Positions 2,553 to 21,818 of a stretch of DNA of 64,000 bases are shown in pieces. Where the stretch lies: the IMG/VR virus record IMGVR_UViG_3300022745_000017, positions 124,001-188,000 of that record. One strand, given 5' to 3'. Numbering within the stretch: position 1 is the first letter of the stretch; every line of letters starts with the position of its first letter. The translations under genes were made by a program, and so were the position numbers. The notes under the pieces were generated by a model. It was not told the origin of the DNA and ran no database searches. It worked only from the letters and a program-made list of their open reading frames with translations.

Positions 2553-2628
2553 TCAGTCACATATATCAATGGTGAGTTAGTGATGGTGTTAAGCTGACTC
2601 GCTTCTATTTTACACCCGGAGATTGATC
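2553..2628 (+). promoter_or_regulatory. promoter motif + pseudoknot leader copy 1
   Basis: TCAGTCACATATA; stem 2572-2580/2594-2602; loop GGTGT 2585-2589 pairs ACACC 2612-2616; SD GGAG 2618. Confidence 0.8.
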
Positions 2629-3003
2629 ATGCGTATTGTTGTTACCCAAGCTGAGTTCGCTCTGTTCGCCAAACAAAATGCTGCGCTGGCAGCACTGGTG
2701 AAGAAAGAGTTTGGGATTGACCTCAAAGGTGAGGAGATCTCAATGCAAGAAGTGGCTGCAAAGTTGTCATCGAAAACGAAGTCTACCTGGGCTGACGCCT
2801 GGGTAGACCAGGATACTGAGTGCCTCGTGATCTACGTCTCGGAAGATGCCTTGCGCATCTCTGGTGCGATGATGCTGGAAAACGCCGAAGCGATCTTTGC
2901 GATCGGTAAGGCTTTCTACGCAGTATTCAGCATGGTTAAACCCATGCTGAAAGGTATTGTGGCACGGGCGGATGCCATCCGCCAGCGCTACGTGCTGAAG
3001 TGA
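2629..3003 (+). CDS. hypothetical early protein
   Basis: GGAG SD, own promoter and terminator. Confidence 0.8.
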   Translation: MRIVVTQAEFALFAKQNAALAALVKKEFGIDLKGEEISMQEVAAKLSSKTKSTWADAWVDQDTECLVIYVSEDALRISGAMMLENAEAIFAIGKAFYAVFSMVKPMLKGIVARADAIRQRYVLK

Positions 3004-3058
3004 TTACAGTGGGCCTAGGCCCACTGTAATCAGAGAAACCGGAAACGGTTTCTTTTTT
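3001..3058 (+). terminator. 32-bp perfect palindrome (GGCCTAGGCC core) plus small hairpin and T-tract
   Basis: TGATTACAGTGGGCCT|AGGCCCACTGTAATCA then GAAACCGGAAACGGTTTC-TTTTTT. Confidence 0.75.
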
Positions 3059-3076
3059 CATTCGAGATATAGACAA

Positions 3077-3151
3077 TCACATATACTCACCTTGATGAGC
3101 AATGGTGTTGCGCTTATCACTTCAAACATTTACACCAAAAAGGTTAACAAC
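3077..3151 (+). promoter_or_regulatory. promoter motif + pseudoknot leader copy 2
   Basis: TCACATATA; stem 3093-3100/3112-3119; loop TGGTGT 3103-3108 pairs ACACCA 3132-3137; SD AAGG. Confidence 0.75.
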
Positions 3152-3607
3152 ATGGACCATAAACAAGTCCTCAGAATTCTCCAAGGTAAGCCTAACTACG
3201 TGCCAGGCTACCCTTTCGCAGGACAGTTCACTGTCATGGAGCCATCTCCTGACTTGCCCTCCCGTGAGTTGTTCTTTGCGGACGAGTCTGGTAGCGTTAA
3301 GCTGCTTGCCTCATTTGCTTCGTGCAAATACAAAGGTAGCCGTATTCTGTTTGACCGTGTAGAGTTTGAGTGGCGTGAGGTGACACCACCCTCACAAGCC
3401 CTACGATTCCTGCACAGCTTTGAGCCTCTTAAAGATGGTGTCTTAGACTTCCTGATCATGGCCCCGTCAGTGCGTCTGTACCGGCTCGACACCACACGAG
3501 CTGTCAAGCACATCTCTCCTATCGGCAAGGTGGACAAGCTGTTCATCAAGCTAGATAGTAGCTGGGACAGCACTGACGCTTTCATCATCACTCGCGTAAT
3601 GGCCTAA
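3152..3607 (+). CDS. hypothetical early protein
   Basis: ATG 3152 after AAGG SD; terminator downstream. Confidence 0.75.
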   Translation: MDHKQVLRILQGKPNYVPGYPFAGQFTVMEPSPDLPSRELFFADESGSVKLLASFASCKYKGSRILFDRVEFEWREVTPPSQALRFLHSFEPLKDGVLDFLIMAPSVRLYRLDTTRAVKHISPIGKVDKLFIKLDSSWDSTDAFIITRVMA

Positions 3608-3740
3608 CCGGGTCACTACGCGAGGAGAAGCACCTGCGGGTGCTTTTTCTTTTTGTCGATTCTATTTTATCACAGCACCATATCACTTGAGTAGTCATGG
3701 CGCAGTGCTATGACCTTCTTAGCTTAGAAAGGCTACTATC

Positions 3741-4238
3741 ATGTTCAAGAATATCGTGGGTATTTTGCTGGGGTTGGTGCTCTGTATTTTGGTGAGTGCC
3801 TGTGGGCAGAGCAAGCCGCCCGAGATCCCTGTGGTCGTGGCAGCCAGTGCACCCGAAACCAAGGTCAAGGTAGTGCCTTACGAGACGTGGAGCAAGAACT
3901 CTGCGGCCAGTCGTGACAACCTCACCATCAACGCCAACGCCTACCGATCCAGTTCTGCGCGTTTGAAGGGCTACAACTTCATTGACCGGGCGGACTCCAC
4001 GATTGGCTCCAAGTGTTCGGTTGGTCATGGCTGGGCTGAAGTCATCTTCACCAAAGCGGATGAAGAAAAGAAAGATGCCACAGGCAACCCCGTCATCCAC
4101 CGTATCTCGGTGTGGTGCAGCACGTTTGACAAGTCTCGCGGCTGCATGTTGGACGACGTGTTTCGCAAGTCGAACTACACCACCGAGGCGCAAGAATGCC
4201 AAGACGGTAAACTGCCTGACCCCCTGCCGCGCATCTGA
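3741..4238 (+). CDS. putative lipoprotein
   Basis: signal peptide ending LVSA-C lipobox; several further Cys. Confidence 0.7.
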   Translation: MFKNIVGILLGLVLCILVSACGQSKPPEIPVVVAASAPETKVKVVPYETWSKNSAASRDNLTINANAYRSSSARLKGYNFIDRADSTIGSKCSVGHGWAEVIFTKADEEKKDATGNPVIHRISVWCSTFDKSRGCMLDDVFRKSNYTTEAQECQDGKLPDPLPRI

Positions 4239-4239
4239 C

Positions 4240-4356
4240 ATGTTCACCATCCCTACCTTCTTGGCCAACATCGGTGCCGCTGTCGTGGTGACTGCCCTCT
4301 TGGGCACTGGCGGTGTCGTGGGTTGGTACGCCCATAAGTACCTGGGTAAGAAATAA
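4240..4356 (+). CDS. 38-aa single-TM peptide
   Basis: MFTIPTFLANIGAAVVVTALLGTGGVVGWYAHKYLGKK; starts 1 nt after lipoprotein stop; hairpin follows. Confidence 0.6.
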   Translation: MFTIPTFLANIGAAVVVTALLGTGGVVGWYAHKYLGKK

Positions 4357-4422
4357 GCCCTGGACAGTGTGTACGGTTAACACCCGTACACACTGTCTAA
4401 CCACTCTCATTGAAAGATTTTT

Positions 4423-5205
4423 ATGCGCAGACTCACTCAACAACAAGCTCATGTCCATCAATACTTCGATGGTCGCACACGTCTTTTCATCACGAAAGAT
4501 TCCCTAAGCTCTGAAGATTCTCGTATCCAGGTCTATCGCGGCGTGATCAAAACCATTAGCATTGCCACAACAAACCAGGACGGCACTCCCAGTAAGAGAG
4601 CAATTGCCCACTACGAGGCTGTCGTAGAAAATGTGGGGTCTATATTTACAACAGTACTCTTGTCAGAGCAATTAGACAGTCTTGAGCGCGGGATTATCTG
4701 GAATACCAATCCTAACACAGTACACGATCTTAACAGTCGCTTCTTTGTGTCTGCAAAGCAAATCGCCATGTGGAGACCGCAGCAAGAGCGAATCCGTTTC
4801 TACGAGTCCATATGTCTGAATCACAAAGATTTGGTCACTTTGCATGGCTTTGATCTGTTGTACCTAGATCAGATCAAGAAGATCCAGAACTCCGGCTTGA
4901 GTGGGGCGTATGCGCCTATTGAGAAACACGAAATAGGTACGTTGACCAAGGCTGCTCGGCAAAACAATCCAGGAATCGATTCATCTTTTTGGACTGAAAA
5001 CAATGTGAAACCGGGCCACAATATCAGTGACACCTCTCTCACATTGGTCGACGAATCGGGGTTTGGTATCTTTAGCATTTTCAAGATCACAGACGATACC
5101 TACACGTTGGAGGAAGCCTGTGATGGATGCTACACGCGTGACTTCACCAAGCGACAACTCATCGAGCAACTGCGCAGCGCAATCAACTGGATTGAAAGAC
5201 AATGA
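4423..5205 (+). CDS. hypothetical protein
   Basis: 260-aa ORF coupled to next gene. Confidence 0.7.
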   Translation: MRRLTQQQAHVHQYFDGRTRLFITKDSLSSEDSRIQVYRGVIKTISIATTNQDGTPSKRAIAHYEAVVENVGSIFTTVLLSEQLDSLERGIIWNTNPNTVHDLNSRFFVSAKQIAMWRPQQERIRFYESICLNHKDLVTLHGFDLLYLDQIKKIQNSGLSGAYAPIEKHEIGTLTKAARQNNPGIDSSFWTENNVKPGHNISDTSLTLVDESGFGIFSIFKITDDTYTLEEACDGCYTRDFTKRQLIEQLRSAINWIERQ

Positions 5206-5582
5206 AACCACAACCTCCCGAGAGCTCCTATGTGCGAGATGAAGAGATAGAGGTAAAGCCGCCTCTACCTCCAAAACCGCTACCACCAACCCGGCCTAAC
5301 AACAGAGTGACTGAGACAGGATTCTCTTCATTACCACCCCAATTAGTAGCAGTCATCCTTGTGGCTGTTATATTGCTGTTTATCTTACTGATGGTTGGAG
5401 CAGAAAAATCTGATCGCCATGTGTACCCTATACGAGTCGACGTAGTTGAGAGACTACCTGATAGTCAACCAGGTATGACCTGTGACAAATACACTGAGCG
5501 CAGATGTAAGGACGCCAGTCAAACAGAATGTGTGGTCTGGGGATCACCACGGATATCTTGCTACCAGAGGAGTGCCAAATGA
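5202..5582 (+). CDS. membrane-anchored protein with Pro-rich N-terminus and 4-Cys C-domain
   Basis: TM segment LVAVILVAVILLFILLMVG; ATGA overlaps on both sides. Confidence 0.7.
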   Translation: MKPQPPESSYVRDEEIEVKPPLPPKPLPPTRPNNRVTETGFSSLPPQLVAVILVAVILLFILLMVGAEKSDRHVYPIRVDVVERLPDSQPGMTCDKYTERRCKDASQTECVVWGSPRISCYQRSAK

Positions 5583-5989
5583 ACAACCCGGCAATAGAAG
5601 AGCAGTTGCACAGCTTCGAAAAACAGATTAAAAATACCCTCAAAGTAGTTGCTAACGCAGATGGCTACAGCGAAGATGGTTGGTCTGGCGTACATCCGGC
5701 AGACCGACAAAAGGTCGCTGATGTTTTGCTAGGCGGTATCGCCTCTCTAAAAGCCATATATGCAGCAGCTCAGCATGGTCGCACTAACACCGTCGATGAG
5801 CTCCGTGAAAAACTAATGCTGGGTTGGAGCACTACCAAGTATGAGTTTAAATCGTCCTACGACACAGTTCGACATTACCGGGACCTCGCTACTTGTCTGG
5901 AGTCTCAGATCTGTATCTTTAGCTGGACAGTTTCAAAAAGCGGTGAGATTGATAATACACTAGGTGCACGCACCAGGTTGGCGTCTTAA
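5579..5989 (+). CDS. hypothetical protein
   Basis: GAGGAG SD, ATG 5579. Confidence 0.75.
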   Translation: MNNPAIEEQLHSFEKQIKNTLKVVANADGYSEDGWSGVHPADRQKVADVLLGGIASLKAIYAAAQHGRTNTVDELREKLMLGWSTTKYEFKSSYDTVRHYRDLATCLESQICIFSWTVSKSGEIDNTLGARTRLAS

Positions 5990-6000
5990 CCCAGTTTTCT

Positions 6001-6081
6001 TCAGTCACATATATCAATGGTGAGTCTTTGATGGTGTTAAAGGACTCACCTATCTGAAACATACACCCTGGAGTATTTATC
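6001..6081 (+). promoter_or_regulatory. promoter motif + pseudoknot leader copy 3
   Basis: TCAGTCACATATA; stem 6019-6029/6040-6050; GGTGT 6033-6037 pairs ACACC 6063-6067; SD GGAG 6070. Confidence 0.8.
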
Positions 6082-6510
6082 ATGCGCAAGTCCAACAGCA
6101 ACCCCGCCGACACATACATTCGCCTGATGGAGGCGGCCTCCTTAGCGAAAGCCATCTGCATTGCGATCTATGGGTCGGTGGAGAATTTCCCGAAAGACTG
6201 GGGGACAAACCTGGCGAAGTACCCTCGGCTTGCCCAATGGAAAGCTCTGCGGAGCAAGGCCGCCGACGCGGGCGAGAAGCTCTTGTCTGAGCATAAGGGG
6301 CCGGATAAACAGCGAGAGCTGTTTGTCCACTTCATGATCTACAAAGGTGACACCCTGGTGGACAAAATGGCTGCTGTGCGGTTGACGCACATTGTGAAGC
6401 CCAACACTGAAACGGCGGGGCTACTCCACATCCCAGTGGAGCACTTAGGTGCGCAGCAGCTCCAAGCCGAGCTGAACCTGTTCTTGGACACCCACCGGAT
6501 CTACGTGTAA
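6082..6510 (+). CDS. hypothetical early protein
   Basis: SD + ATG; terminator 6523-6568. Confidence 0.8.
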   Translation: MRKSNSNPADTYIRLMEAASLAKAICIAIYGSVENFPKDWGTNLAKYPRLAQWKALRSKAADAGEKLLSEHKGPDKQRELFVHFMIYKGDTLVDKMAAVRLTHIVKPNTETAGLLHIPVEHLGAQQLQAELNLFLDTHRIYV

Positions 6511-6522
6511 GTCTGGTGGGCT

Positions 6523-6568
6523 AGCTACGGGTGGGCCTCGGCCCACCCGTAGCTGCTCTTTCTTTTTT
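6523..6568 (+). terminator. intrinsic terminator
   Basis: AGCTACGGGTGGGCC-TC-GGCCCACCCGTAGCT + T-tract. Confidence 0.8.
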
Positions 6569-6639
6569 GTTTCGATTCATCTACACCCACATATCACCTA
6601 CGTGGTCTAATCTAGACTATCACTGTGAGAGTACTTATC

Positions 6640-7830
6640 ATGATCAATACGCAATCCCTGATGGAAAACTTGCAAAATGGCAAGACCGTCTACCGTGTCG
6701 GCTTTCGCTATGATCAAAACAGCAAGCAACCCATCTACAAGCTGTTCGAAGTCATTGGTTACCGAGCCGTGGTGGCCATGTCGCACACAGCTATTCACTC
6801 ATCTGTTCCAATGCCTGAGGTTAAAATGGCAGCGATCTTGAAAGGATCGTGCGAGCAAGACATCTATATCCTTGGTGGGCGACCTTCTAAAACGGATGGG
6901 GTCGAGACATGGATGATGATTTATGGTCGCTCCATCTGTAGTAACCATTACGACATTACCCGAGAGAAAGATCATGGTGACATCTGGTTTGAAGTACAGA
7001 TGTACGCTAACCTCACCTACGACAGTGAGCTGATGATCGGGGCTATCAAAGCGTTCCCCCAGGCTTGGCAAGCTGTGCCGGATGAGCTGTTGGGCGCTGC
7101 TTATTGCCTGAACTGCTACGCAGACGAGACACCTATTGATTTCGAACTCCTGAAAGCCCTGCGCAGCGGGGATACCGTGTCTGAAAAACTGGTGATCAGT
7201 ACGAAAAGCTGGGATGGTGGCCATCCCACTGACACACCTAAGGCTTATAACAAACAAGGCCTGGTGGTTACTGACCCATTTGGTCGGAGCAGCCCCACTG
7301 ACATGAGCGTCGTTCCGGCAGGGAAATTCAACCGTGCTGGCCCTACGGGGGATGGTAAGGAGTATTCCCATCACGCTTGGGTCAATCGCTTGCCTGGCTT
7401 GGTGCCTTCCTCACAACACGCATCTGCGCCCAATACCTTCAAGTGTACAGATTGCGTGCAACAAGTGACCATGTTTTGCCCAGGTGATCATAGCGGTTGT
7501 CCGAATGATTTCCGAGGTATTCGTGAGGCCATGGCTGTCGTCGCTGAAATAAATGAGTCGCCAGCCAGTGGTGAAGATGTAGGGGTTGAATCGCCGGCAG
7601 AAGTGTCTGCGTTTGCTGCGCAGCATCGCTTCGATTGTCCCACCACTTTAGAGCAGGCGCGTGAAAGCGCTGATAACCAAAGACCGGTGGTCGCGGGGTT
7701 GAGCGCTTTCTTCGATCCATCAAAAGCTTACGAGGAGGCAAATCTGAAAACTGATGAGCTGCCGCGTCAGGAGTCTAGTGATACCTCATCGCAAAGCGAC
7801 ACATCGACGCCCGATACATCCCAGGACTGA
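6640..7830 (+). CDS. hypothetical protein, paralog family A
   Basis: shares FP..W....Y.L..Y.DE motif with 8674 and 9545 ORFs; Ser/Asp-rich tail. Confidence 0.75.
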   Translation: MINTQSLMENLQNGKTVYRVGFRYDQNSKQPIYKLFEVIGYRAVVAMSHTAIHSSVPMPEVKMAAILKGSCEQDIYILGGRPSKTDGVETWMMIYGRSICSNHYDITREKDHGDIWFEVQMYANLTYDSELMIGAIKAFPQAWQAVPDELLGAAYCLNCYADETPIDFELLKALRSGDTVSEKLVISTKSWDGGHPTDTPKAYNKQGLVVTDPFGRSSPTDMSVVPAGKFNRAGPTGDGKEYSHHAWVNRLPGLVPSSQHASAPNTFKCTDCVQQVTMFCPGDHSGCPNDFRGIREAMAVVAEINESPASGEDVGVESPAEVSAFAAQHRFDCPTTLEQARESADNQRPVVAGLSAFFDPSKAYEEANLKTDELPRQESSDTSSQSDTSTPDTSQD

Positions 7831-7896
7831 TTGAACCCCAGTACACTAGGTGAGGGTCTACTCACCTAGTGTACGTCCTCTATCTCGGAGTTTTAT

Positions 7897-8208: not shown

Positions 8209-8228
8209 ACCCTGTACTTGGAGTTTTT

Positions 8229-11658: not shown

Positions 11659-11717
11659 CCACATATCCCCTACCTGGAGTCAAGTGACTCCAGTCGCCCC
11701 CCAATCAAGGAACCCCT

Positions 11718-12901: not shown

Positions 12902-12979
12902 TCAGTCACATATATCCGGAGATGAATCGGCGATGATGCTGACTGGTTCATCTCTTTAACTGCATCAAAAGGAGTTACT
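12902..12979 (+). promoter_or_regulatory. promoter motif + pseudoknot leader copy 4
   Basis: TCAGTCACATATA; stem 12919-12930/12943-12954; TGATGC 12934-12939 pairs GCATCA 12962-12967; SD GGAG 12971. Confidence 0.8.
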
Positions 12980-13438
12980 GTGGTTGACCTCGGTGATAAT
13001 AGCAGCTTCGGGCTGCCTCGTGTCCTGACTTGTGTCACACAGGTCATGCAAGCGCTTGGTTTTGAATACCGCCTGCGTGGCACCCCCAGGGTGCGGATCG
13101 TCATGGAAATAGGTAAAAGTGGGGTCTTGGCTGGTTACAGCCATAAGGACAACACGATATACCTTACCTTAGGGGCCCCAACAGCCGCTATGTGGCATGA
13201 AGCCGTGCACGCGGGGCAACCTGATGCCGAGCATGTGGACTACTACACCTCTCTGGGCGTCATAGACCAAGAGCTCTATTCGACATCCCGAACCGAGCAG
13301 GAAGCGCGCGCTGTGACTGCTGTGTACTACCTAGCCCGCAAGCTAGGTAGTCTGGACGAGGCAATTGCGAAAGCGGTAGCTTGCCAGAAGAAGACTAGCT
13401 TGGGCAACTTAGAGCAAGCCATATCAGCTTGTATCTGA
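12980..13438 (+). CDS. putative zincin-like (HExxH) metallopeptidase
   Basis: MWHEAVHAGQ plus downstream TEQEARA. Confidence 0.65.
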   Translation: MVDLGDNSSFGLPRVLTCVTQVMQALGFEYRLRGTPRVRIVMEIGKSGVLAGYSHKDNTIYLTLGAPTAAMWHEAVHAGQPDAEHVDYYTSLGVIDQELYSTSRTEQEARAVTAVYYLARKLGSLDEAIAKAVACQKKTSLGNLEQAISACI

Positions 13439-13443: not shown

Positions 13444-13498
13444 ATAGTCGAGAGGTGTGCTGTACAGCACACCTCTCGACTATAATCTATTTTTCTTT
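13444..13498 (+). terminator. 40-bp perfect palindrome + T-tract
   Basis: ATAGTCGAGAGGTGTGCTGT|ACAGCACACCTCTCGACTAT. Confidence 0.75.
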
Positions 13499-13571
13499 GG
13501 TAACATATACCAGCAGTGAGTCTAAATGATGCTAAGGCTCACTATCACTAACTGCATCTAGGAGATGGATT
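13499..13571 (+). promoter_or_regulatory. promoter motif + pseudoknot leader copy 5
   Basis: GGTAACATATA; stem 13515-13523/13535-13543; GATGC 13528-13532 pairs GCATC 13554-13558; SD GGAG 13561. Confidence 0.75.
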
Positions 13572-14000
13572 ATGACCTATTTGGCATTTGTGTTATCAGA
13601 CAAGACACGTTCTCGACTGATGGCTAAGCATGGAGTCGTGGAAGACCCGGCGACAAAGGTCTACGTGCACCACGTCACAATTGACTTGACGTGGGGTGCT
13701 ACGACTGCGCATGAGTCTCGTGCGGCATACTTAAACCGTATGCAGGAGACAGAAGGCCTCCGGGTGTATGCATCCGAAAACAAGGTCAGTGCACCTAATG
13801 GAGAGACGGTCTTTGCCAAGATCGTTTTCGAAGGTGTGGACACTCTGCGCTCCACCGCAGGCCCACTCCACATCACCCTCTGGGTACTCAAACCCCTGCC
13901 TGCAAAAACAGGTAGACTCATCGCTGAAGAAGCGCTGAGTAAGTTCGATGGTCAATGGGACCCAATCCCGCTGACCGGATCTTTTCAAGTGTTAAACTAA
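13572..14000 (+). CDS. 2H phosphoesterase / cyclic phosphodiesterase
   Basis: two HxT motifs (HHVTI, LHITL) about 65 aa apart. Confidence 0.7.
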   Translation: MTYLAFVLSDKTRSRLMAKHGVVEDPATKVYVHHVTIDLTWGATTAHESRAAYLNRMQETEGLRVYASENKVSAPNGETVFAKIVFEGVDTLRSTAGPLHITLWVLKPLPAKTGRLIAEEALSKFDGQWDPIPLTGSFQVLN

Positions 14001-14414: not shown

Positions 14415-14492
14415 TCAGTCACATATAGCGACAATGAGATTGCAATAGTGCTAGTGATCTCATATACCAACTGCACTTTAGGAGTAATGAAA
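14415..14492 (+). promoter_or_regulatory. promoter motif + pseudoknot leader copy 6
   Basis: TCAGTCACATATA; stem 14434-14443/14454-14463; AGTGC 14447-14451 pairs GCACT 14473-14477; SD GGAG 14481. Confidence 0.8.
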
Positions 14493-15109
14493 ATGGAATT
14501 CGAATACATGGAGTTTGAGGAGACTGTGTCAAATACCCATATGGTGGCCCAGATGATGGGCTATCTCGGCTATGAGGTCGAAAGGGGTATCGATATGCCG
14601 ATCATCCGAGTGACTGACGAGTATGTCGGACACGCTGCCGATTGGCGACTGGTGAACGGCAGGATAAGCGCCATCACAATGTATGCTGGGCGCTGCGAGA
14701 GCTCATTGTGGCACGAGCTATGCCACCACCACCAACCGATTCTCCGGCAAGGTGTAGACCCATCATACTACCGTGAAGACGGCAGTATGGATGAGGCCGC
14801 ATATGCCGCCGACCCAGTAGAGTGCCAGGCTCGCGCCGTTGGCATGCTGGCAGTAGCTGCTAAGATACATGGGGAGCGGCGCGCTGTCGACATGGCCCTG
14901 ATAACCAGGGCTGTCCTCGGAGCCGACCCACTCCATCATGAGTTGTTCATAGCCACGCTCACCGGCTTGAAAGCTCTCTCTCTCTGTATCATGCGGAGAA
15001 GTTAGCTGTGGAGCGCCTTGATAGAGGCGATGATGTGGGTAGTTTATGCGAGGCTATCACGGCAGCCGATGAAAAAAGAGCCAAAGCACGTCGAGCAGGA
15101 CAATCCTAA
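14493..15109 (+). CDS. HExxH metallopeptidase-like paralog, frameshifted at (CT)6
   Basis: LWHELCHHHQP, VECQARAV; as written stops at 15005, removing one CT extends it to TAA 15109 with a tail matching the 12980 paralog. Confidence 0.6.
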
Positions 15110-15199
15110 GAAAGCATAAACCAAACCCAACTAACCTACCTGTAAAACGGTAGGTTAGTTGGGCTGAGTAATGTGTTTTCTTTTGTATCCTATTTTTCT

Positions 15200-15276
15200 T
15201 CAGTCACATATATCGTTGGTGACTTGGCAATGGTGCTAGTCAAGGCATATCTTTAATTGCACTTAGGAGATTGATT
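15200..15276 (+). promoter_or_regulatory. promoter motif + pseudoknot leader copy 7
   Basis: TCAGTCACATATA; stem 15220-15228/15239-15247; GGTGC 15232-15236 pairs GCACT 15259-15263; SD GGAG 15266. Confidence 0.75.
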
Positions 15277-15654
15277 ATGACACACCACGCAGCAGTATAT
15301 GAGATCACCGGATTCTTTGATGGTCAGCTGGACGGTGTAGTGGATTTTGCAGGGCTCACAGCCCTGCAAAATCCAGCACTGTTAGCAGCCGGCTTGAAAG
15401 CCGGCACAGCGGCTTGTGGCCGCACAGAGAAGGCCCTGTGGGCCATCGCCCTCAAGGAGGGTAGACTGTACCTCACCGTGGCGGGTGAGGTCGCCCAGCT
15501 AACCAAGGAGACGTGGCCTCCGGTTATCTGGGCGGTTAGTGAGCATCTGGCTCCGATCCCGCCGGAAGGCGTGGTTGGGCCGGATGTCTTTGAAGATATC
15601 TGGCACCGCATCGGTGCTCCAGTTATCGAAGGAGGGCAACATGTTCTCCATTGA
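15277..15654 (+). CDS. hypothetical early protein (family C)
   Basis: SD + ATG 15277; GVVGPDVFEDIW. Confidence 0.75.
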   Translation: MTHHAAVYEITGFFDGQLDGVVDFAGLTALQNPALLAAGLKAGTAACGRTEKALWAIALKEGRLYLTVAGEVAQLTKETWPPVIWAVSEHLAPIPPEGVVGPDVFEDIWHRIGAPVIEGGQHVLH

Positions 15655-16176: not shown

Positions 16177-17190
16177 ATGAGTAAGCAAAAACCTTTCGAT
16201 GTCCGCATCATGCGTGGACTAATCATGTCCGAAGTCACTTTCGAGAAATCCACTAGGCATTGGGCCAGCTTTGATCAGCTGATCTTCAAATCAACCTGTG
16301 GTCGCACTTTCCGCTTGGGCACAGACGATTGCTCTGCACCCGAGCTCATCGACATCGTCGGTGATTTACAAGACTTGGTTGGGCATCCTCTTTTGCAAGC
16401 GGAGTCAGTGCAGTCTAAAGCAAAGCTGTCTAACCGCTACAAGTTCTCTCGTAAGAAGGCAGATACGCACACCAAGAGCATGTGGACTTACTATAAGTTT
16501 GCTACCATCAAAGGCCATGTGCATTTGCGCTGGTTAGGTGAGTCTGATTACTATTCGGTCGAGGTAGACTTTGTCGAACTCGTTGGCCTACAAGCAGCGC
16601 ATGACCACGAGGAAGTGGCTCACCTGCGGGCAAAGCTAGAGCAAAAACAAGCCGAAGAGAAGCCAGGTAAACCCATCTTGTCCATGTGCGAGAAGCTGGC
16701 CTTTTTCGGTTACTCAGAGCTAAACGCCTGTCTAACTGTAGCCCCTGGCTCCAGCTGTATGGTGGTCAACGACAAGTCCGGCAGCACTTACACCGGGGGT
16801 GGTGACTACTTTCACACTGCGGTCGTTATGGCTTTGATAGAGTACGGGTTTGCAGACCAGATATCCTCACTGAGCAAACCCTGCGCACTCAGTGAGTTGC
16901 TGCGCGATCACGTCATGCCACTACAAACCTTAGGCATCTCCCAAGTGCAATTGGAGATTAACCCACACCTCAACCCCAACCACATACTCACACTACCCGA
17001 GTACCTAGCCACCATTGACCCACCTATCACCGAGCAAGAATCATCTGACATCCAAGATGACAACTGTTTGTTCAAATTCACTCTACAATCTGTTTGGAAA
17101 GAACATCATGGAAAATCATTCTACGCAAGGTCAGCCCAGCTCGTCAGCCATAAAGCTGCCGACTACATTAGAGCAAGCACTAGCCATTAA
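16177..17190 (+). CDS. two-domain phage protein; N-domain of the widespread WT.YK.ATIKG.V..RW.GES..YYS type
   Basis: motif recognition; GGAG SD; promoter variant at 16142. Confidence 0.7.
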   Translation: MSKQKPFDVRIMRGLIMSEVTFEKSTRHWASFDQLIFKSTCGRTFRLGTDDCSAPELIDIVGDLQDLVGHPLLQAESVQSKAKLSNRYKFSRKKADTHTKSMWTYYKFATIKGHVHLRWLGESDYYSVEVDFVELVGLQAAHDHEEVAHLRAKLEQKQAEEKPGKPILSMCEKLAFFGYSELNACLTVAPGSSCMVVNDKSGSTYTGGGDYFHTAVVMALIEYGFADQISSLSKPCALSELLRDHVMPLQTLGISQVQLEINPHLNPNHILTLPEYLATIDPPITEQESSDIQDDNCLFKFTLQSVWKEHHGKSFYARSAQLVSHKAADYIRASTSH

Positions 17191-17605
17191 GCACCTACGG
17201 GGTGGTGATAGTTATACCGCTATTTGTAAGAGGGCATACGAAGACATCATGGCATGGCATCTCATGCACATGAACACGTTCTACACGGCAAATAACCCAC
17301 CGCCTGATACTTGGATTTATGACATCGCTGCAAACAAAGACGATGTCATGCAAAAGCGCTACCACATCGATGTCCCACCTGACCTGCGACTGATGGCGAT
17401 ACGCGCGATTGCCAGTAGCTACCCGATTTACTTCGAGCACTTCACCCAAGAGAGCATGCTCGATGTCGATCCTGCGGCCTTGCAAAAGGTTATAGATAGC
17501 CTCCAAGAGTATGTCTATGGTAGCAATGACATCAACACGCTATGCAGCGCGATCTCTGTGCTAGAGACAACCATCGCTCAGATCTGCAGCCGGGCAAGTA
17601 AATAA
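17108..17605 (+). CDS. hypothetical protein
   Basis: ORF, AAGAA before ATG 17108; start uncertain. Confidence 0.65.
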   Translation: MENHSTQGQPSSSAIKLPTTLEQALAIKHLRGGDSYTAICKRAYEDIMAWHLMHMNTFYTANNPPPDTWIYDIAANKDDVMQKRYHIDVPPDLRLMAIRAIASSYPIYFEHFTQESMLDVDPAALQKVIDSLQEYVYGSNDINTLCSAISVLETTIAQICSRASK

Positions 17606-17675
17606 GCAAACCAGCTCAACATCTTTTAGAGCCACTCTAACCAGGGTGGCTACATTTTTCTTTTAGGAGTTGCTC

Positions 17676-19355
17676 ATGAACCCGAAGCACCTGAATGCTC
17701 TTGGACATTTCTCATACATGATCTTTAGCCACACGCAGATATCCCTCACCTTGCGAGAAACAGCTGCTGTGGCCAAAGACCTAGCTGTTAATACCCATAG
17801 CGATAGCGATACAGTGGTGGCAGATCTCTTAGAAGGTCGTGATTGGGATACCTTTGAAAATCTGGAGACCTATGACGATGTCTTGGAAGGCATTCGACGC
17901 TCAGATATCTTGCAGTCTGTAGCGGACTACTACATCGCAGCGATTCCTGATGATAAGCTAGCTAAAAAGCTCTTAGCGTCATCAAAGCAATTCATCTGGG
18001 GAAGGGATCTACTCAGCGTCGAGCAGGTTCGCATTTTCCTCAGCTCTATTCGCCCTGCAAATCCAGAACCCAAAGTTCTCAACATTTACAAGATGGACTT
18101 GGCTCAGATAGATGGTATTTACTGCGGTCGTCCTTCCATCTATGGCAATCTCTACGGCACTAAGGAGTTTGGCCGTGGTAATGCAGTGGTGCTCCATCAA
18201 GACTACTTGCAAAAACACCCTAAGTACGTCGAGGACATTAAACCCGACCTAGAAGGGCAAAACCTCGTTTGCTTTTGTAAACCCAAAGCTTGCCACTGCG
18301 ATAACTTACTGACCGTCTGCAACACGCCCAAAACCGAGAACCGGCTCTCTAAGCTCGTTGTAGCTGAAAAGCTGATAGAGTCCAAGCCTACACGATCTCT
18401 TATCGACAAAATAGTCGAAGACACAATTGGCAACGACGATACATTTTGGAGGTGGATCAGAGAGTTACAAGATCAGGTCAAAAAGCTGGACTTCTACTCC
18501 AAGCCCTCGGAAAAGACTGAGAAAGTCAATCAAGCCCCGCCTAAGGCTAGCCTGGGTTATGAGGGCTTACAGTACGAGCAAGGCGCTTGGCACTACACTG
18601 GCAATGAAGTCGTCAAGGAGTGCCTGCGCCGACTCCATGACACGCCGTCCGGGATTCCTAAGCAGGAGTCTTACATGCCTCGGGTGTGGGAAGAGTTTCA
18701 AGCAATGGCAGGACAGAGAGCAGCAACGCAGCTTGCTTCGCCTAAGCCGTGTGACCCAGCCCAAACCCAGCAGGGTGGTTACTTGGTGGACATCACTGAG
18801 TCTCTGCCTAAGAACTACATTTATCTGCCACACGACAATAGTGTAGCAGTGAAAACAGCAGACCTGGTTTGGTCGATCCAGCCCCACGCCGCCGGATCTA
18901 AAGAGCGCTACGAAGCTCTTTGCCAGATCTTACCCAACAAGCTGCACCAAACCCAACACCCCTTGTCTATCATTGTGGACTGTGAGAAGCTCAGGAAGAC
19001 CTTTCCCAACGGTTGTATCTGGATTACTTACACTCCCAGTGAAATGACTGACAGCAACGTCAGCATTGTCAAAGCGGTCTGTGGTGATTTGGCAGTACCT
19101 AACAGCAAGCAACTCCAGGCCTACACTTTCTCGGTGACTTGGGAGCTATGGAAGCCCCACCAGCACAATGCCGACTTCTTAGCTGACCATGGCCTGTACC
19201 AAGCATGTCAAGCCATCGCTGACTGGATCGCCATTGTGACGGAGTACGCAGCCATCTCTCCGGAAGGTACACTGATGGAGATCGGTGTGCCGGCCAGACT
19301 CAATCTGGGCAAATGCACTGCTGACATGACCAATTGCGAAATCTCGGAGTTCTAA
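17676..19355 (+). CDS. multidomain protein containing DUF4326
   Basis: IYCGRPSIYGN...LEGQNLVCFCKPKACHCDNL signature. Confidence 0.75.
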   Translation: MNPKHLNALGHFSYMIFSHTQISLTLRETAAVAKDLAVNTHSDSDTVVADLLEGRDWDTFENLETYDDVLEGIRRSDILQSVADYYIAAIPDDKLAKKLLASSKQFIWGRDLLSVEQVRIFLSSIRPANPEPKVLNIYKMDLAQIDGIYCGRPSIYGNLYGTKEFGRGNAVVLHQDYLQKHPKYVEDIKPDLEGQNLVCFCKPKACHCDNLLTVCNTPKTENRLSKLVVAEKLIESKPTRSLIDKIVEDTIGNDDTFWRWIRELQDQVKKLDFYSKPSEKTEKVNQAPPKASLGYEGLQYEQGAWHYTGNEVVKECLRRLHDTPSGIPKQESYMPRVWEEFQAMAGQRAATQLASPKPCDPAQTQQGGYLVDITESLPKNYIYLPHDNSVAVKTADLVWSIQPHAAGSKERYEALCQILPNKLHQTQHPLSIIVDCEKLRKTFPNGCIWITYTPSEMTDSNVSIVKAVCGDLAVPNSKQLQAYTFSVTWELWKPHQHNADFLADHGLYQACQAIADWIAIVTEYAAISPEGTLMEIGVPARLNLGKCTADMTNCEISEF

Positions 19356-19732
19356 TGAAACAACCTGACAAAATCATTCAAGCCACCATTTTCTCGACGT
19401 GCTACGTCGTTGTAGATGGTGAGACCCACCACCACGCAAACCTCGCTAACAAAGGCAGGCCCTACGATTACCTGGCTTCATGTCTAGAGATCGTTAGCGC
19501 CCGCTACCCTGGCCAGGTCATCAAGATCAATTGTGCCACGCGCACATTGGAGCTTCCATTTGTAGTGATCATCGCCCCCGACGAGATCACCGTTGACTAC
19601 ACTCCCGGCCACCAGCTAGAAAACAAAGTGACCCTCAAGCGAGACGAAGATCACCTCTTCAAAACCACTCGCATCCCGCAGCTCTATGACGCACTACAAA
19701 GCGCATGGAAAACCAGCTTGAAAAAGGACTGA
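19355..19732 (+). CDS. hypothetical protein
   Basis: GGAG SD, TAATG overlap. Confidence 0.7.
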   Translation: MKQPDKIIQATIFSTCYVVVDGETHHHANLANKGRPYDYLASCLEIVSARYPGQVIKINCATRTLELPFVVIIAPDEITVDYTPGHQLENKVTLKRDEDHLFKTTRIPQLYDALQSAWKTSLKKD

Positions 19733-19733
19733 T

Positions 19734-20108
19734 ATGAAACCCGATCACCCCGAGCTCATGACCAAAGGCGAGCTCGCTTACGATCAGCAGCTCCAAGAGT
19801 TCGCTGCCAAACTGAAGCCTGTGCACATCGAGCAGCTCTACTCACTCATCAAGAGCCGCCGCCCCATTGAAGATGGTTCTGTACTCAGCAAGTCTGCCCG
19901 TGATGATTTGTTGGAGATTGGCGCAATCAGTAAGGCCGTCTTCAATGGACAAGAAGGCTATCAGGTCTGCACCTACATGGGGGCTGAGCTGTTTCGCAAA
20001 GCTATGCACAAAGACGGCTTTGAAGCAGCGACGCTGGACAAGGCTATCGCTGAGTACAAAGCCCGCCACACGCCACCAGAAGACCAACCCATCTACTTCA
20101 CGGTTTAA
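19734..20108 (+). CDS. conserved phage hypothetical protein
   Basis: DG.V.SKS.RD.L.E.G motif; AAGGA SD. Confidence 0.75.
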   Translation: MKPDHPELMTKGELAYDQQLQEFAAKLKPVHIEQLYSLIKSRRPIEDGSVLSKSARDDLLEIGAISKAVFNGQEGYQVCTYMGAELFRKAMHKDGFEAATLDKAIAEYKARHTPPEDQPIYFTV

Positions 20109-20119
20109 GGATACCAATC

Positions 20120-20548
20120 ATGTCACACAAGCAAGTCAATCCAGCCCCTTACCTGCAACGCGCCATTTACGAATGGTGCCTCGCGTCAGGTTTCACACCT
20201 CACGTCGCATTCATTGCGACACCGGAAATGGGTGTGCCCATGCAGTACGTCAAGGACAACGCTGTCGCGCTCAATGTGTTGCCCAGTGCGGTAAACAATC
20301 TGACTTGGGGCGACGATTACTTGGCATTCGAAGCTCGCTTCAATGGCCAAGCCCACCACATCGTCATCCCAGTTACCCACATCTTGAAGGTGTTTGCCAA
20401 AGAAACGGGTGAGGGCCTGGATTTCATCCCTGTCTTACAAGACCCGATTCCCTTCGCTACGCAATCCCCACCAACCGATCAGCCCCATCCGGGTGAAAAC
20501 CCCTCGACTACCAAACCCCGTCCTAAACTGACCCTCGTGAAAGGTTAA
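20120..20548 (+). CDS. sspB: ClpXP adaptor SspB (stringent starvation protein B)
   Basis: PYL.RAIYEWC...GFTPH, F.ARFNG, C-terminal ClpX-binding RPKLTLVK. Confidence 0.9.
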   Translation: MSHKQVNPAPYLQRAIYEWCLASGFTPHVAFIATPEMGVPMQYVKDNAVALNVLPSAVNNLTWGDDYLAFEARFNGQAHHIVIPVTHILKVFAKETGEGLDFIPVLQDPIPFATQSPPTDQPHPGENPSTTKPRPKLTLVKG

Positions 20549-20550
20549 TC

Positions 20551-21306
20551 ATGGACCATCGCAATCCCTTAGGGGCCGCTCGTTTCATCCATACCGCCTA
20601 CGCACTCACCCACCCACTACAGTTTGCGTGGGAGCACGGTGAGCGTATCCACAAACTCTCCAAAGTCTGGGGTGCGTCAGCTAAAGACACTGTGGGCTAC
20701 CTCACAGAAGAAGCTATCAGTGTCTATGCGAACCACCCTGACACCAAGCAGCTGACCATTGCACACATTCAAAACCGCATGGCGCAGGAAATCTACACGA
20801 CTCTGGAGCGAAAAAGCGCTACTGAGTTCGAGTTCCTGGCGTTTTGCATCAACAAGTTTGAGTGCATGCCTGGTTTGGTGATGCGCCCCGGTGTCGTCGA
20901 ATGGGCTAAGCGTGCACAAGCCAACAAGACATCGCACCGCGTATCGATCCTGTCACCCAAATACCCCACCCTGAGCGACGATGACAAGCTCCGAAGTGTG
21001 CTGGTGATCGATGAGGAAGATGTCCATCTTACAGCCACCATCAGCCGCTTGGTGGAGACTTGCAACGAGTATGAGGTATGGCTCAGTTGCAAGACGATCG
21101 AAGCCTATGCCCAAGCTGTGACAGCTGCTATCGACTCTGGATCGGGGTTGCGAATAGCCCCGTGCTCCTTGAATTACGAATCCAACACCAGCAAAAGCTT
21201 TGTCCGTGCTAATCGCAATGGTGAGCTTAAAGGAGATTACACCACTGTAAGTGTCCGTATTCGAGACATCAACCCAGTCGGTAAGTTGTTGTTGCACTGG
21301 CAGTGA
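20551..21306 (+). CDS. hypothetical protein
   Basis: 251-aa ORF in operon. Confidence 0.75.
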   Translation: MDHRNPLGAARFIHTAYALTHPLQFAWEHGERIHKLSKVWGASAKDTVGYLTEEAISVYANHPDTKQLTIAHIQNRMAQEIYTTLERKSATEFEFLAFCINKFECMPGLVMRPGVVEWAKRAQANKTSHRVSILSPKYPTLSDDDKLRSVLVIDEEDVHLTATISRLVETCNEYEVWLSCKTIEAYAQAVTAAIDSGSGLRIAPCSLNYESNTSKSFVRANRNGELKGDYTTVSVRIRDINPVGKLLLHWQ

Positions 21307-21370
21307 TAGTTAGTAGGTAGGTTAAAGACCTACCTGCCGACATGTGGTTAACAAAATGTAGAGGATTACC

Positions 21371-21670
21371 ATGGCTGAAGAGCTGATCAAAAAGGTTACC
21401 CGAGACTTAAATGCAGCAGGATACGAACTCGTCGATGTACTCGATCCGAATAAACGATTCCTCATCCACCGCGTGGAAGACATAGTCGATCACCAGACAC
21501 TTAACGAGATAGATATGTGGCTATACACCAACGGTGTACACGGCGAGCTACCGCCTAAGCACATCGTTGATGGATTGACGCTTCTAGGTCTTACGGACTT
21601 TGAGCAGAGACGCTTTCATACTCTTAACGGCTTAAGCCACCTCAAAGTGTGGACTAAAATAAAGTCCTAA
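21371..21670 (+). CDS. hypothetical protein (family B)
   Basis: AAGYEL.DVL.P.KR...GV.G.LPPK shared with 21819 ORF. Confidence 0.8.
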   Translation: MAEELIKKVTRDLNAAGYELVDVLDPNKRFLIHRVEDIVDHQTLNEIDMWLYTNGVHGELPPKHIVDGLTLLGLTDFEQRRFHTLNGLSHLKVWTKIKS

Positions 21671-21738
21671 CGGTCCTTTAGCAGTGGTAGGCAGCTGGGA
21701 CTGCCTACCACTGCGTATCTATTTGACTCTATTTTTCT

Positions 21739-21818
21739 TCAGTCACATATGCTCTTAGTGAGTTGGTAATAATGCTAAGCTAACTTGTCTCATTCACTGC
21801 ATCGAGGAGATTGATATC
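21739..21818 (+). promoter_or_regulatory. promoter motif + pseudoknot leader copy 8
   Basis: TCAGTCACATAT; GU-rich stem 21758-21767/21779-21788; ATGC 21772-21775 pairs GCAT 21799-21802; SD GAGGAG. Confidence 0.7.

What the first reader, a model, noticed from the sequence alone, without database searches (positions are those of the whole stretch)
2553..21818. Repeated covarying H-type pseudoknot leader abutting the SD of eight accessory genes: candidate new phage cis-regulatory RNA/regulon
Seen: eight intergenic segments (2553, 3077, 6001, 12902, 13499, 14415, 15200, 21739) share one layout. It runs promoter motif, 8-12 bp stem P1 of variable sequence with many G-U pairs, conserved 10-13 nt loop (RAT-RRTGY-TR), pyrimidine/A-rich linker, 4-6 nt complementary to the loop, then the SD 1-3 nt later. 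The loop/3' pairing covaries: GGTGT/ACACC (x2), TGGTGT/ACACCA, TGATGC/GCATCA, GATGC/GCATC, AGTGC/GCACT, GGTGC/GCACT, ATGC/GCAT. P1 sequence differs between copies while pairing is kept. The downstream genes are mostly unrelated (2H phosphodiesterase, two HExxH proteins, orphans). Inference: a selected RNA fold controlling translation or stability of an early host-takeover regulon, e.g. a riboswitch-like sensor, a protein operator, or a translation/export tag for mRNAs of a nucleus-forming phage. I do not recognise it as a known family.
Basis: partly seen in the sequence, partly recalled or inferred. Interest (0 to 1): 0.92.

Follow-up and report, generated by a model that had tools for sequence, protein, structure and literature searches.

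The report
Pseudoknotted leader on phage early genes
An uncultured phiKZ-like, nucleus-forming jumbo phage puts the same promoter plus a hairpin-and-pseudoknot RNA leader in front of at least eleven unrelated small early genes; this RNA motif matches no described family and is probably a shared handle for controlling the stability or translation of those messages.

Summary
All eight sites carry the same unit: T-rich tract, TCAGTCACATAT-type promoter, hairpin P1, conserved loop RAU-RRUGY-U, about 10 nt of linker, five nucleotides complementary to the loop (P2), then SD 0-3 nt later. A covariance model finds exactly these eight copies in the window (41-64 bits; next hit 15 bits). It finds three more elsewhere in the same 218-kb phage.

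P2 pairs in 54 of 55 cells. Three of its five pairs show compensatory transitions, including a G·U intermediate. P1 sequences differ between copies but pairing is kept, 23% of pairs are G·U, and the sense strand folds better in 11 of 11 copies. This argues for an RNA structure. Rfam has no match.

The promoter fits the jumbo-phage virion-RNAP early type. Its predicted start lies at the base of P1, and 5'-terminal hairpins follow most CACATAT promoters in this phage.

Caveats:
- No TSS or probing data exist.
- Folding-energy z-scores are weak.
- All copies come from one phage; distant relatives share the promoter and 5' hairpin but not the pseudoknot.

Function is inferred. The most likely role is a stability and translation-control leader, possibly an operator. 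A riboswitch or an export tag is untested.

The parts
2553..2631 (+). Leader copy 1 (promoter to start codon), before a 124-aa orphan
   Evidence: Core CACATAT 2558-2564; predicted +1 about 2572. P1 2571-2581 / 2593-2603; loop 2582-2592. P2 2585-2589 (GGTGT) with 2612-2616 (ACACC). SD 2618-2621; ATG 2629. CM 53 bits.
3073..3154 (+). Leader copy 2, degenerate promoter (ACAATCACATATAC), before a 151-aa orphan
   Evidence: P1 3093-3100 / 3112-3119; loop 3101-3111. P2 3104-3108 with 3132-3136, extendable to 6 bp (TGGTGT/ACACCA). SD-like AAGG 3140-3143; ATG 3152. CM 41.5 bits.
6001..6084 (+). Leader copy 3, before a 142-aa orphan
   Evidence: P1 6019-6029 / 6040-6050. P2 6033-6037 with 6063-6067. 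SD 6070-6073; ATG 6082. CM 51.9 bits.
12902..12982 (+). Leader copy 4, before a 152-aa HExxH protein
   Evidence: P1 12918-12931 / 12941-12955 (14 bp with one bulge). P2 12935-12939 (GATGC) with 12962-12966 (GCATC), extendable to 6 bp. GTG start 12980. CM 58 bits.
13497..13574 (+). Leader copy 5, degenerate promoter (TTGGTAACATATAC), before a 142-aa protein with two HxT motifs
   Evidence: P1 13515-13523 / 13535-13543. P2 13528-13532 with 13554-13558. SD 13560-13563; ATG 13572. CM 53.2 bits.
14415..14495 (+). Leader copy 6, before a 170-aa HExxH protein, a distant paralogue of the copy-4 gene
   Evidence: P1 14434-14443 / 14454-14463. P2 14447-14451 (AGTGC) with 14473-14477 (GCACT). ATG 14493. 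CM 48.2 bits. Paralogy 32% over 100 aa.
15200..15279 (+). Leader copy 7, before a 125-aa orphan
   Evidence: P1 15219-15228 / 15239-15248 (6 bp, one mismatch, then 3 bp). P2 15232-15236 (GGTGC) with 15259-15263 (GCACT), which includes the G·U intermediate. ATG 15277. CM 63.5 bits.
21739..21821 (+). Leader copy 8, before a 115-aa orphan
   Evidence: P1 21757-21767 / 21779-21790. P2 21771-21775 (AATGC) with 21799-21803 (GCATC): 4 bp plus one A·C mismatch. GTG start 21819. CM 63.6 bits.
2490..2517 (+). Terminator-like hairpin closing the preceding unit, just upstream of copy 1
   Evidence: 11-bp stem followed by a T-rich tail. Similar + strand terminators lie at 3032-3055, 13444-13483 and 21681-21714, just upstream of copies 2, 5 and 8. 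Together these give terminator-promoter-leader-gene cassettes.
32964..33032 (+). Degenerate relative of the leader: same promoter type, 5' hairpin with an AAUGGU-containing loop, no P2 partner
   Evidence: TCGGTCACATATAC, then an 8-bp P1 (GTGTACCA/TGGTACAC; RNAfold extends it to 12 pairs) starting at the predicted +1, then an SD and GTG 33030. CM only 11.7 bits.

Best explanation
Each unit is a plug-in expression cassette of a chimallin-encoding, phiKZ-like jumbo phage.

A phage-specific promoter (T-rich tract, TCAGT-CACATAT, seven bases, then (G/A)TG) is probably read by the phage's own multisubunit RNA polymerase early in infection. It starts the transcript at the foot of hairpin P1. The mRNA therefore begins with a base-paired 5' end, which in Gram-negative hosts hinders 5'-end-dependent decay by RppH and RNase E.

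In this subfamily the conserved P1 loop (RAU-RRUGY-U) also pairs with five or six nucleotides lying 0-3 nt upstream of the SD. That makes an H-type pseudoknot: L1 of 3-4 nt, S2 of 5-6 bp, L3 of 6-12 nt. The whole leader folds into a compact, self-contained structure that ends at the ribosome-binding site.

I infer that this fold sets, and probably gates, ribosome loading and lifetime for a set of unrelated early accessory mRNAs. The invariant unpaired bases at the helix junction are L1 AU, L2 U and the U before the tail. They make it a common recognition site for a trans-acting factor, most likely a protein, that could switch the whole set together.

Shown: the repeated architecture, pairing with covariation, strand asymmetry, coupling to the promoter, and absence from Rfam. 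Inferred: the transcription start, early timing, the stabilising role, the translational effect and the existence of a factor.
For: - Eight copies in the window and three more in the same genome; none occurs without the promoter.
- P2: 54 of 55 cells paired, three pairs with two-sided transitions plus a G·U intermediate, 0 of 500 shuffles as good, and the register is specific.
- P1 arms differ in sequence but pair. Seven of nine P1 pairs show two-sided changes.
- 28 of 123 P1 pairs are G·U, and the sense strand is more stable than its complement in 11 of 11 copies.
- Copies are only 48-79% identical overall, and P2 classes do not track overall similarity. The loop, tail and junction bases are therefore held by selection.
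- The geometry is sterically feasible, and the loop-to-tail spacing is nearly constant.
- The sites are not sigma-70-like. Terminators sit just upstream.
- In 21 of 31 CACATAT sites a hairpin begins 0-2 nt after the predicted +1, against 22% for random positions.
- Jumbo-phage early promoters are conserved motifs of about 10 nt centred near -10, with T-rich upstream sequence, in front of hypothetical genes (PMC7598289, PMC8244752, PMC11512511).
- Paired 5' ends protect against RppH and RNase E (PMC3997798 and references in it).
- The downstream genes are unrelated orphans.
Against: - There is no TSS, probing or expression data, and the phage is uncultured.
- Whole-leader MFE z-scores are weak, averaging about -0.9.
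- P2 is short (duplex energy -3.9 to -9.6 kcal/mol), and no pseudoknot-aware energy model was run.
- All copies are paralogues in one genome, so the independent compensatory events number about three to five. The shuffle controls overstate significance for related sequences.
- The alignment behind one search was fitted to P1.
- Relatives with the same promoter keep a 5' hairpin with a similar G/U-rich loop but no pseudoknot. P2 is therefore not needed for expression from this promoter type.
- No candidate trans factor was identified.
Confidence: 0.5

Rival explanations
1. Only the promoter and a generic 5' hairpin matter. The conserved loop, tail and SD spacer are leftovers of a duplicated, mobile regulatory cassette, like PeSLs in T4-type phages. 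The P2 complementarity is then a weak or incidental feature without a function of its own.
For: - The terminator-promoter-leader cassettes flank unrelated orphans, as PeSLs do (PMC2839356).
- Other promoters of the same type carry unrelated hairpins.
- Relatives lack P2.
- Energy z-scores are weak.
Against: - Copies have diverged to 48-79% identity and the P1 arms are largely rewritten. Even so, the loop, the tail and their complementarity persist, with three two-sided changes and a G·U intermediate.
- Pairing is lost on any register shift.
Confidence: 0.15
2. The pseudoknot is a ligand-sensing riboswitch. A small molecule bound at the P1/P2 junction stabilises P2 and changes access to the adjacent SD. 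This would make a set of early accessory genes respond to a host metabolite or signalling nucleotide.
For: - The topology is that of the small H-type pseudoknot riboswitches such as preQ1-I and SAM-II (own knowledge): a hairpin loop pairs with a tail next to the SD after an A/pyrimidine-rich linker.
- Invariant unpaired bases cluster at the junction.
Against: - No Rfam riboswitch matches, even at E<=10.
- The SD itself lies outside P2.
- No consistent alternative SD-sequestering fold exists.
- The downstream genes share no pathway.
- The motif is confined to one phage.
Confidence: 0.1
3. The loop start codon opens a tiny upstream ORF, a minigene or leader peptide. Its translation remodels P1 and P2 and so couples to, or competes with, initiation at the main gene.
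For: - Every loop holds AUG or GUG, because the invariant RUG lies inside the P2 strand.
- The reading frames run 3-11 codons (for example MVLS, MMLI, MMLR).
- A GAG lies 6-7 nt upstream in the P1 5' arm (reading).
Against: - The start codon and the SD-like GAG are both buried in P1 or P2.
- Lengths and stop positions are not conserved.
- One frame runs into the main ORF (copy 6), and another runs for 86 codons out of frame (copy 2).
- A uORF does not explain covariation in the tail.
Confidence: 0.05
4. The hairpin acts on the polymerase rather than the ribosome. It would be either a DNA-level hairpin promoter element as in N4, or a promoter-proximal nut/put-like RNA that makes the phage RNAP resistant to terminators.
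For: - The hairpin always sits at a fixed distance from the promoter core.
- Many terminators lie in the region.
- An antitermination-like mechanism has been proposed for the jumbo phage 201phi2-1 (PMC11512511).
Against: - G·U-rich stems and the sense-strand asymmetry argue against a DNA hairpin.
- The P2 partner abuts the SD, 40 nt downstream.
- Each cassette has its own promoter right after a terminator. That is the opposite of what read-through control would need.
Confidence: 0.07

Closest known systems
Early (virion-RNAP) promoters of phiKZ-like jumbo phages
   Same: - A strongly conserved, phage-specific motif of about 10 nt with T-rich upstream sequence, found repeatedly in front of small hypothetical genes.
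- Not sigma-70-like.
- The phage encodes split beta/beta' RNAP subunits and chimallin (PMC7598289, PMC8244752, PMC11512511).
   Different: - The sequence differs (CACATAT core against the AT-rich phiKZ consensus).
- The start site is not mapped.
- No conserved structured leader has been reported downstream of phiKZ or 201phi2-1 early promoters in the papers read.
PeSL regulatory cassettes of T4-type phages
   Same: Short repeated promoter-plus-stem-loop cassettes that flank unrelated orphan genes in plastic genome regions (PMC2839356).
   Different: - PeSLs use sigma-70-like promoters, and their stem-loop is a terminator upstream of the promoter.
- Here the promoter is not sigma-70-like.
- The conserved structure lies in the transcribed leader and includes a covarying pseudoknot.
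- Recombination between copies was not tested.
5'-terminal stabiliser hairpins (ompA 5' UTR, T7 gene 10 leader)
   Same: A stable hairpin within 0-2 nt of the predicted 5' end, the arrangement known to block RppH and RNase E entry (PMC3997798; the T7 example is own knowledge).
   Different: Those hairpins have no conserved loop and no pairing to an SD-proximal tail. The 5' end here is inferred, not mapped.
Small H-type pseudoknot riboswitches (preQ1-I, SAM-II)
   Same: A hairpin loop pairs with a 3' tail next to the SD after a linker, and conserved unpaired bases sit at the junction (own knowledge, compared).
   Different: - No covariance-model match.
- P1 is about twice as long.
- The SD is not part of P2.
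- There are 11 copies on unrelated genes in one phage.
T4 post-transcriptional control of early genes (gene 32 leader pseudoknot; RegA and RegB regulons)
   Same: - Phage mRNAs carry a leader pseudoknot (gene 32).
- Many unrelated early mRNAs are controlled together through a shared feature at the ribosome-binding site (RegA, RegB). Both points are own knowledge.
   Different: - The gene 32 pseudoknot is a single autoregulatory site far from the SD.
- RegA and RegB targets share short linear motifs, not a structured tag.
- No RegA-like or RegB-like factor was looked for here.

Membership tests
Any Rfam 15 family (riboswitches, ribozymes and phage cis-regulatory RNAs included) | Covariance-model score at or above the family's gathering threshold | tested here: not met
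   No hits in the whole window at gathering thresholds. At E<=10 on 2500-3200 there were only four chance-level hits; none is a match to the leader, and the one that overlaps it is an antisense snoRNA hit at 14.6 bits.
H-type RNA pseudoknot | Hairpin-loop bases pair with a downstream single strand, and the pairing is kept through compensatory change | tested here: met
   54 of 55 cells paired. Three of five pairs show two-sided changes. 0 of 500 shuffles do as well, and the register is specific.
H-type RNA pseudoknot | Connecting loops long enough to span the helices | tested here: met
   L1 is 3-4 nt across a 5-6 bp S2. L3 is 6-12 nt across a core P1 of about 9 bp. This was judged against textbook loop-length rules (own knowledge), not modelled in 3D.
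H-type RNA pseudoknot | The fold forms in the RNA (chemical or enzymatic probing) | not testable with these tools
   Needs SHAPE/DMS or in-line probing.
phiKZ-type early (virion RNAP) promoter | The phage encodes multisubunit RNAPs and is phiKZ-like | tested here: met
   PhiKZ_MCP in the window. RNA_pol_Rpb2_6, RNA_pol_Rpb1_2 and Chimallin_Phikzvirus genes elsewhere in the same genome.
phiKZ-type early (virion RNAP) promoter | A conserved motif of about 10 nt centred near -10 with T-rich upstream sequence, repeated before small hypothetical genes, and not sigma-70-like | tested here: inconclusive
   Motif enrichment, the T-rich tract and the gene context fit. Sigma-70 consensus sites are not enriched. 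The position relative to the TSS is only inferred, from the fixed CACATAT-N7-RTG spacing and the hairpin onset.
phiKZ-type early (virion RNAP) promoter | Transcribed early, by the virion RNAP | not testable with these tools
   The phage is uncultured and no transcriptome is available.
PeSL (promoter-early stem-loop) cassette | Strong sigma-70-like early promoter | tested here: not met
   No sigma-70-type match coincides with the motif, and such matches occur at background frequency.
PeSL (promoter-early stem-loop) cassette | A terminator stem-loop paired with the promoter, flanking orphan genes | tested here: met
   Terminator-like hairpins lie directly upstream of copies 1, 2, 5 and 8. The downstream genes are orphans.
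PeSL (promoter-early stem-loop) cassette | Mediates recombination and shuffling between copies | not tested
   No close relative is available for a synteny comparison.
5'-terminal stabiliser hairpin | Stem begins within about 2-4 nt of the transcript's 5' end | tested here: inconclusive
   The hairpin starts 0-2 nt after the predicted +1 in all 11 leaders and in 21 of 31 CACATAT sites, against 22% for random positions. The +1 is a prediction.
preQ1-I / SAM-II type pseudoknot riboswitch | Family consensus sequence and structure; SD inside P2; ligand-dependent folding | tested here: not met
   No covariance-model match. The SD lies 0-3 nt outside P2. Ligand response cannot be tested here.

The most novel reading that the evidence does not exclude
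The pseudoknot is a switchable tag. It would be read by a small molecule, for example a host stress or immune-signalling nucleotide, or by a dedicated phage or host protein. Alternatively, it would mark these first mRNAs for handling or export from the early infection compartment.
Probability: 0.15. Interest if true: 0.85.

Novelty: new variant of a known kind. Interest (0 to 1): 0.55.

Why it matters
Work on gene control in nucleus-forming jumbo phages has centred on promoters and on the phages' own polymerases. Little is known about control after transcription. This element is a structured leader with covariation support, shared by at least eleven unrelated early genes. It would be a concrete, small (about 60 nt), synthesisable object for asking three questions:
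- How do such phages protect and time their first messages?
- Does a common factor read them?
- How are newly acquired orphan genes plugged into the early programme?

It also adds an RNA motif that Rfam lacks. Its reach is limited because it has so far been seen in one uncultured phage.

Tried and rejected
- **Rfam:** no family matches, at gathering or at permissive thresholds. There are no tRNAs.
- **Close relatives:** none in INPHARED. The best capsid identity to a cultured phage is 40%.
- **Protein-based locus search:** it returned only the phage itself. The copy-6 protein has no homologue among 5.8 billion proteins, so orthologous leaders could not be compared.
- **Whole-collection DNA scans:** I used promoter-plus-loop patterns (IMG/VR, metagenomes) and a promoter-independent GATGC-class pattern. 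They found the leader only in this phage. All other hits scored below the model threshold.
- **Relatives sharing the promoter:** IMGVR_UViG_3300042566_001512, and JFJP01038332 and JFJP01037420 (capsid 45% identical). They have 5' hairpins but no match to the model. A possible weak P2-like pairing in the JFJP leaders competes with a second hairpin, so I did not accept it.
- **Kissing-loop or anti-SD alternative:** pairings of the linker with the SD are weak and inconsistent (-0.9 to -5.6 kcal/mol). Rejected as a conserved feature.
- **Sigma-70 promoter reading:** rejected.
- **Thermodynamic support alone:** z-scores are weak, so the case rests on covariation and positional consistency.
- **The 2H-like protein (13572-14000):** no hit to solved structures. 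The single-sequence AlphaFold model reached pLDDT 36.5, so I ran no fold search. The HExxH protein also had no PDB hit.
- **Genome walking:** I covered about 148 of 218 kb. One look-up failed, so about 70 kb was checked only by the pattern scans.

Full report
**What the window is.** The window is part of a 218-kb uncultured jumbo phage. It is IMGVR_UViG_3300022745_000017, positions 124001-188000, and was also assembled as ENA ERZ27252001 k141_805126.
- The window encodes a PhiKZ-type major capsid protein, a class II RNR, an NAD-dependent DNA ligase and a helicase.
- Outside the window, the same genome encodes chimallin and split RNAP beta/beta' homologues. It is therefore a nucleus-forming, phiKZ-like phage with its own multisubunit RNA polymerases.
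- It has no close relative in GenBank phages. The best capsid identity to a cultured phage is 40%, to Burkholderia phage FLC9 and Ralstonia phage RP12.

**Checking the observation.** All eight sites are real and can be aligned over about 80 nt. Each has these parts in order:
- a T-rich tract;
- the motif TCAGTCACATAT(A/G)(T/C), degenerate in two copies;
- a hairpin, P1;
- a loop with consensus RAU-RRUGY-U;
- a pyrimidine/A-rich linker;
- a 5-nt segment complementary to the loop core;
- GGAG or AGGA 0-3 nt later;
- a start codon 6-10 nt after that.

TCACATATA occurs 7 times in the window against 0.25 expected. A covariance model built from the leader without the promoter was run over both strands with filters off. 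It returns exactly the eight cited copies at 41-64 bits, and the next hit scores 15.5 bits. The model finds three more copies in the same genome outside the window: L009:3425, L155:2758 (the same site as L124:6030) and L155:9923, which lies before a NUDIX gene. No further copy turned up in about 148 kb of the genome read directly, nor in two whole-genome pattern scans.

**Is the pairing real?**
- *P2 pairing.* In the MAFFT alignment of ten copies, the five core pairs form in 49 of 50 cells. Three pairs change on both sides, no shuffle of 500 reaches the observed score, and sliding the partner by 1-3 columns drops pairing to 15-52%. With eleven copies, 54 of 55 cells pair.
- *P2 haplotypes.* The haplotypes are GGUGU/ACACC, GAUGC/GCAUC, AGUGC/GCACU, GGUGC/GCACU (a G·U) and AAUGC/GCAUC (one A·C). 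All the differences are transitions. This is the stepwise route G-C to G·U to A-U, with an intermediate still present.
- *P1.* RNAalifold recovers it. On the model-fitted alignment, seven of nine P1 pairs show two-sided changes. P1 and P2 together are 90.8% paired against 76.8% in shuffles. That alignment leans towards P1, and one row is shifted by one column in P2.
- *Strand asymmetry.* 28 of 123 P1 pairs are G·U, and the sense strand folds better than its complement in 11 of 11 copies. This points to a structure in sense RNA, not in DNA.
- *Age of the copies.* The copies are only 48-79% identical overall, and the P2 classes do not follow overall similarity. They are old copies, and the loop, tail and junction bases have been held.
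- *Against.* Whole-leader folding energies are barely better than dinucleotide shuffles (z from -2.0 to +0.1). P2 is short (-3.9 to -9.6 kcal/mol as a duplex). All copies are paralogues in one genome, so the independent compensatory events number about three to five.

**The promoter and the 5' end.**
- The motif is not sigma-70-like. Sigma-70 consensus matches sit at background frequency and do not coincide with it.
- Published work says each RNAP-encoding jumbo phage has its own conserved motif of about 10 nt, centred near -10 and with T-rich sequence upstream. The motif lies in front of early operons of hypothetical genes and is read by the virion RNAP (PMC7598289, PMC8244752, PMC11512511). 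The motif here fits that description.
- Across all promoter-like sites in this phage the core is CACATAT, seven bases, then (G/A/T)TG. In 21 of 31 CACATAT sites a stable hairpin begins 0-2 nt after that point, against 22% for random positions.
- Examples with quite different stems and loops lie at window 6588, 11660, 32969, 41219 and 48263, and at several sites outside the window.
- I infer that transcription starts at or just before this (G/A)TG, and that a 5'-terminal hairpin is a general property of transcripts from this promoter type.
- Base-paired 5' ends are known to hinder RppH and RNase E (PMC3997798 and the Belasco papers it cites).
- Terminator-like hairpins are enriched in the region (36 against 15.9 expected) and sit directly upstream of copies 1, 2, 5 and 8. 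The units are therefore terminator-promoter-leader-gene cassettes.

**What is special about the eleven copies.** They share the TCAGT extension of the promoter, the loop motif, the P2 partner, and a conserved SD-plus-spacer (GGAGAUUGAU in most).
- The geometry is L1 of 3-4 nt (RAU, with AU invariant), S2 of 5-6 bp (the central U-A and G-C pairs are invariant), L2 of 1-4 nt (first U invariant) and L3 of 6-12 nt (last U invariant).
- The loop-to-tail distance is nearly constant.
- These loop lengths are compatible with an H-type pseudoknot by the usual rules (own knowledge).
- The first genes downstream are unrelated. Only the genes of copies 4 and 6 are distant paralogues.
- None of the eight window genes hits Pfam or PHROGs, and one had no homologue among 5.8 billion proteins.
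These remain motif-level hints.

**Relatives.** Two distant relatives share the promoter almost letter for letter. One is IMGVR_UViG_3300042566_001512. The other is a phage represented by JFJP01038332 and JFJP01037420, whose capsid is 45% identical.
- Their transcripts also start with a hairpin.
- The JFJP leaders (five copies) have a GUGGU pentaloop and a second small hairpin before the SD.
- None matches the model or has a convincing P2.
- The promoter-plus-5'-hairpin design is therefore clade-wide, G/U-rich loops recur, and the pseudoknot is specific to this lineage.

**Mechanism.** My best reading, at confidence about 0.5, has two parts. P1 caps the 5' end and protects the message. P2 docks the SD-proximal tail on the P1 loop, which makes a compact and autonomous leader that sets or gates ribosome access. 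The invariant junction bases form a common recognition site, most likely for a protein, through which this set of early accessory mRNAs can be controlled together.

Rivals:
- An incidental remnant of a mobile cassette (0.15).
- A ligand-sensing riboswitch (0.10).
- A polymerase-directed element such as an N4-type DNA hairpin or a nut/put-like RNA (0.07).
- A loop-initiated mini-ORF (0.05). Every loop holds AUG or GUG and opens frames of 3-11 codons, but their ends are not conserved and the start is buried.
- An anti-SD or kissing-loop alternative, which was not supported.

**Comparison with known systems.**
- It works like a 5' stabiliser hairpin combined with a pseudoknotted translational operator.
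- In genome organisation it resembles the PeSL cassettes of T4-type phages (PMC2839356).
- It is not a member of any Rfam family.
- It fails the PeSL criterion of a sigma-70 promoter.
- It fails the preQ1-I/SAM-II criteria: no model match, and the SD lies outside P2.
- Full-text searches found no paper linking jumbo phages or Chimalliviridae with pseudoknots in untranslated regions.

**Verdict.** This is a real, repeated RNA leader with covariation support and of a new family, tied to a jumbo-phage early-type promoter. Its function is inferred, and it is confined to one uncultured phage so far. Novelty: a new variant of a known kind. Interest: 0.55.

Noticed in passing
window 6588-6640, 11660-11710, 37403, 41219-41280, 43597, 48263; also L157:19266, L157:20619, L156:17425: A second set of promoter-like sites shares the CACATAT core, often as CACATATCAC with A/T-rich rather than TCAGT upstream sequence. 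Each is followed by its own stable hairpin starting at the same offset. This may be a different strength or timing class of the same polymerase.
   Followed up: partly
window 32964-33032: A site with the TCGGTCACATATAC promoter and a perfect 8-bp 5' hairpin (RNAfold extends it to 12 pairs). Its loop contains AAUGGU, like the leader family, but it has no complementary tail. It looks like a leader that lost, or never gained, P2.
   Followed up: partly
window 57911-58090: Directly after the major capsid gene lies a T-rich tract plus TCAGTCACTTAT, one base off the promoter core. It is followed by a longer GC-rich hairpin. In the JFJP relative, full promoter-leader units sit on the corresponding side of its capsid gene (L144).
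   Followed up: no
loops of all eleven leaders, e.g. window 2583-2597, 12933-12959: Every P1 loop contains AUG or GUG and opens a 3-11 codon frame (MVLS, MMLI, MMLR, MVLKDSPI and others). In copy 6 the loop GUG at 14448 is in frame with the main ORF. In copy 2 the loop AUG opens the 86-codon out-of-frame ORF 3102-3362.
   Followed up: partly
window 12980-13438, 14493-15005 and 13572-14000: Two distantly paralogous small HExxH proteins, and a 142-aa protein with two HxT motifs (2H-phosphoesterase-like), all behind leaders. Pfam, PHROGs and PDB sequence searches find nothing. The single-sequence structure model was unusable (pLDDT 36.5).
   Followed up: partly
L144 (- strand 396, 1340), L206 (4294, 9921 and one more read from the - strand near 11661): A relative with only 45% capsid identity keeps the TCAGTCACATAT promoter nearly unchanged. 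It has its own leader family: a 9-bp P1 with a GUGGU pentaloop, an ACAAAC linker, and a second hairpin GCUAC-NNN-GUAGC just before the SD.
   Followed up: partly
L009:3502-3600 (upstream of the window): One leader copy drives a 32-codon ORF, followed about 120 nt later by a 663-aa gene. The leader therefore does not always precede an ordinary-sized protein gene.
   Followed up: no
window 15124-15165: A long (17-bp) hairpin between the copy-6 gene and the copy-7 promoter, scored as a terminator on the minus strand. On the plus strand it is followed by a T-rich run, so it may terminate in both directions.
   Followed up: no
window 17670-19355: A 561-aa protein with a DUF4326 domain, in the middle of the leader-rich region and without a leader of its own. 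A small DUF4326 protein also occurs in the JFJP relative (L206 14680-14961).
   Followed up: no
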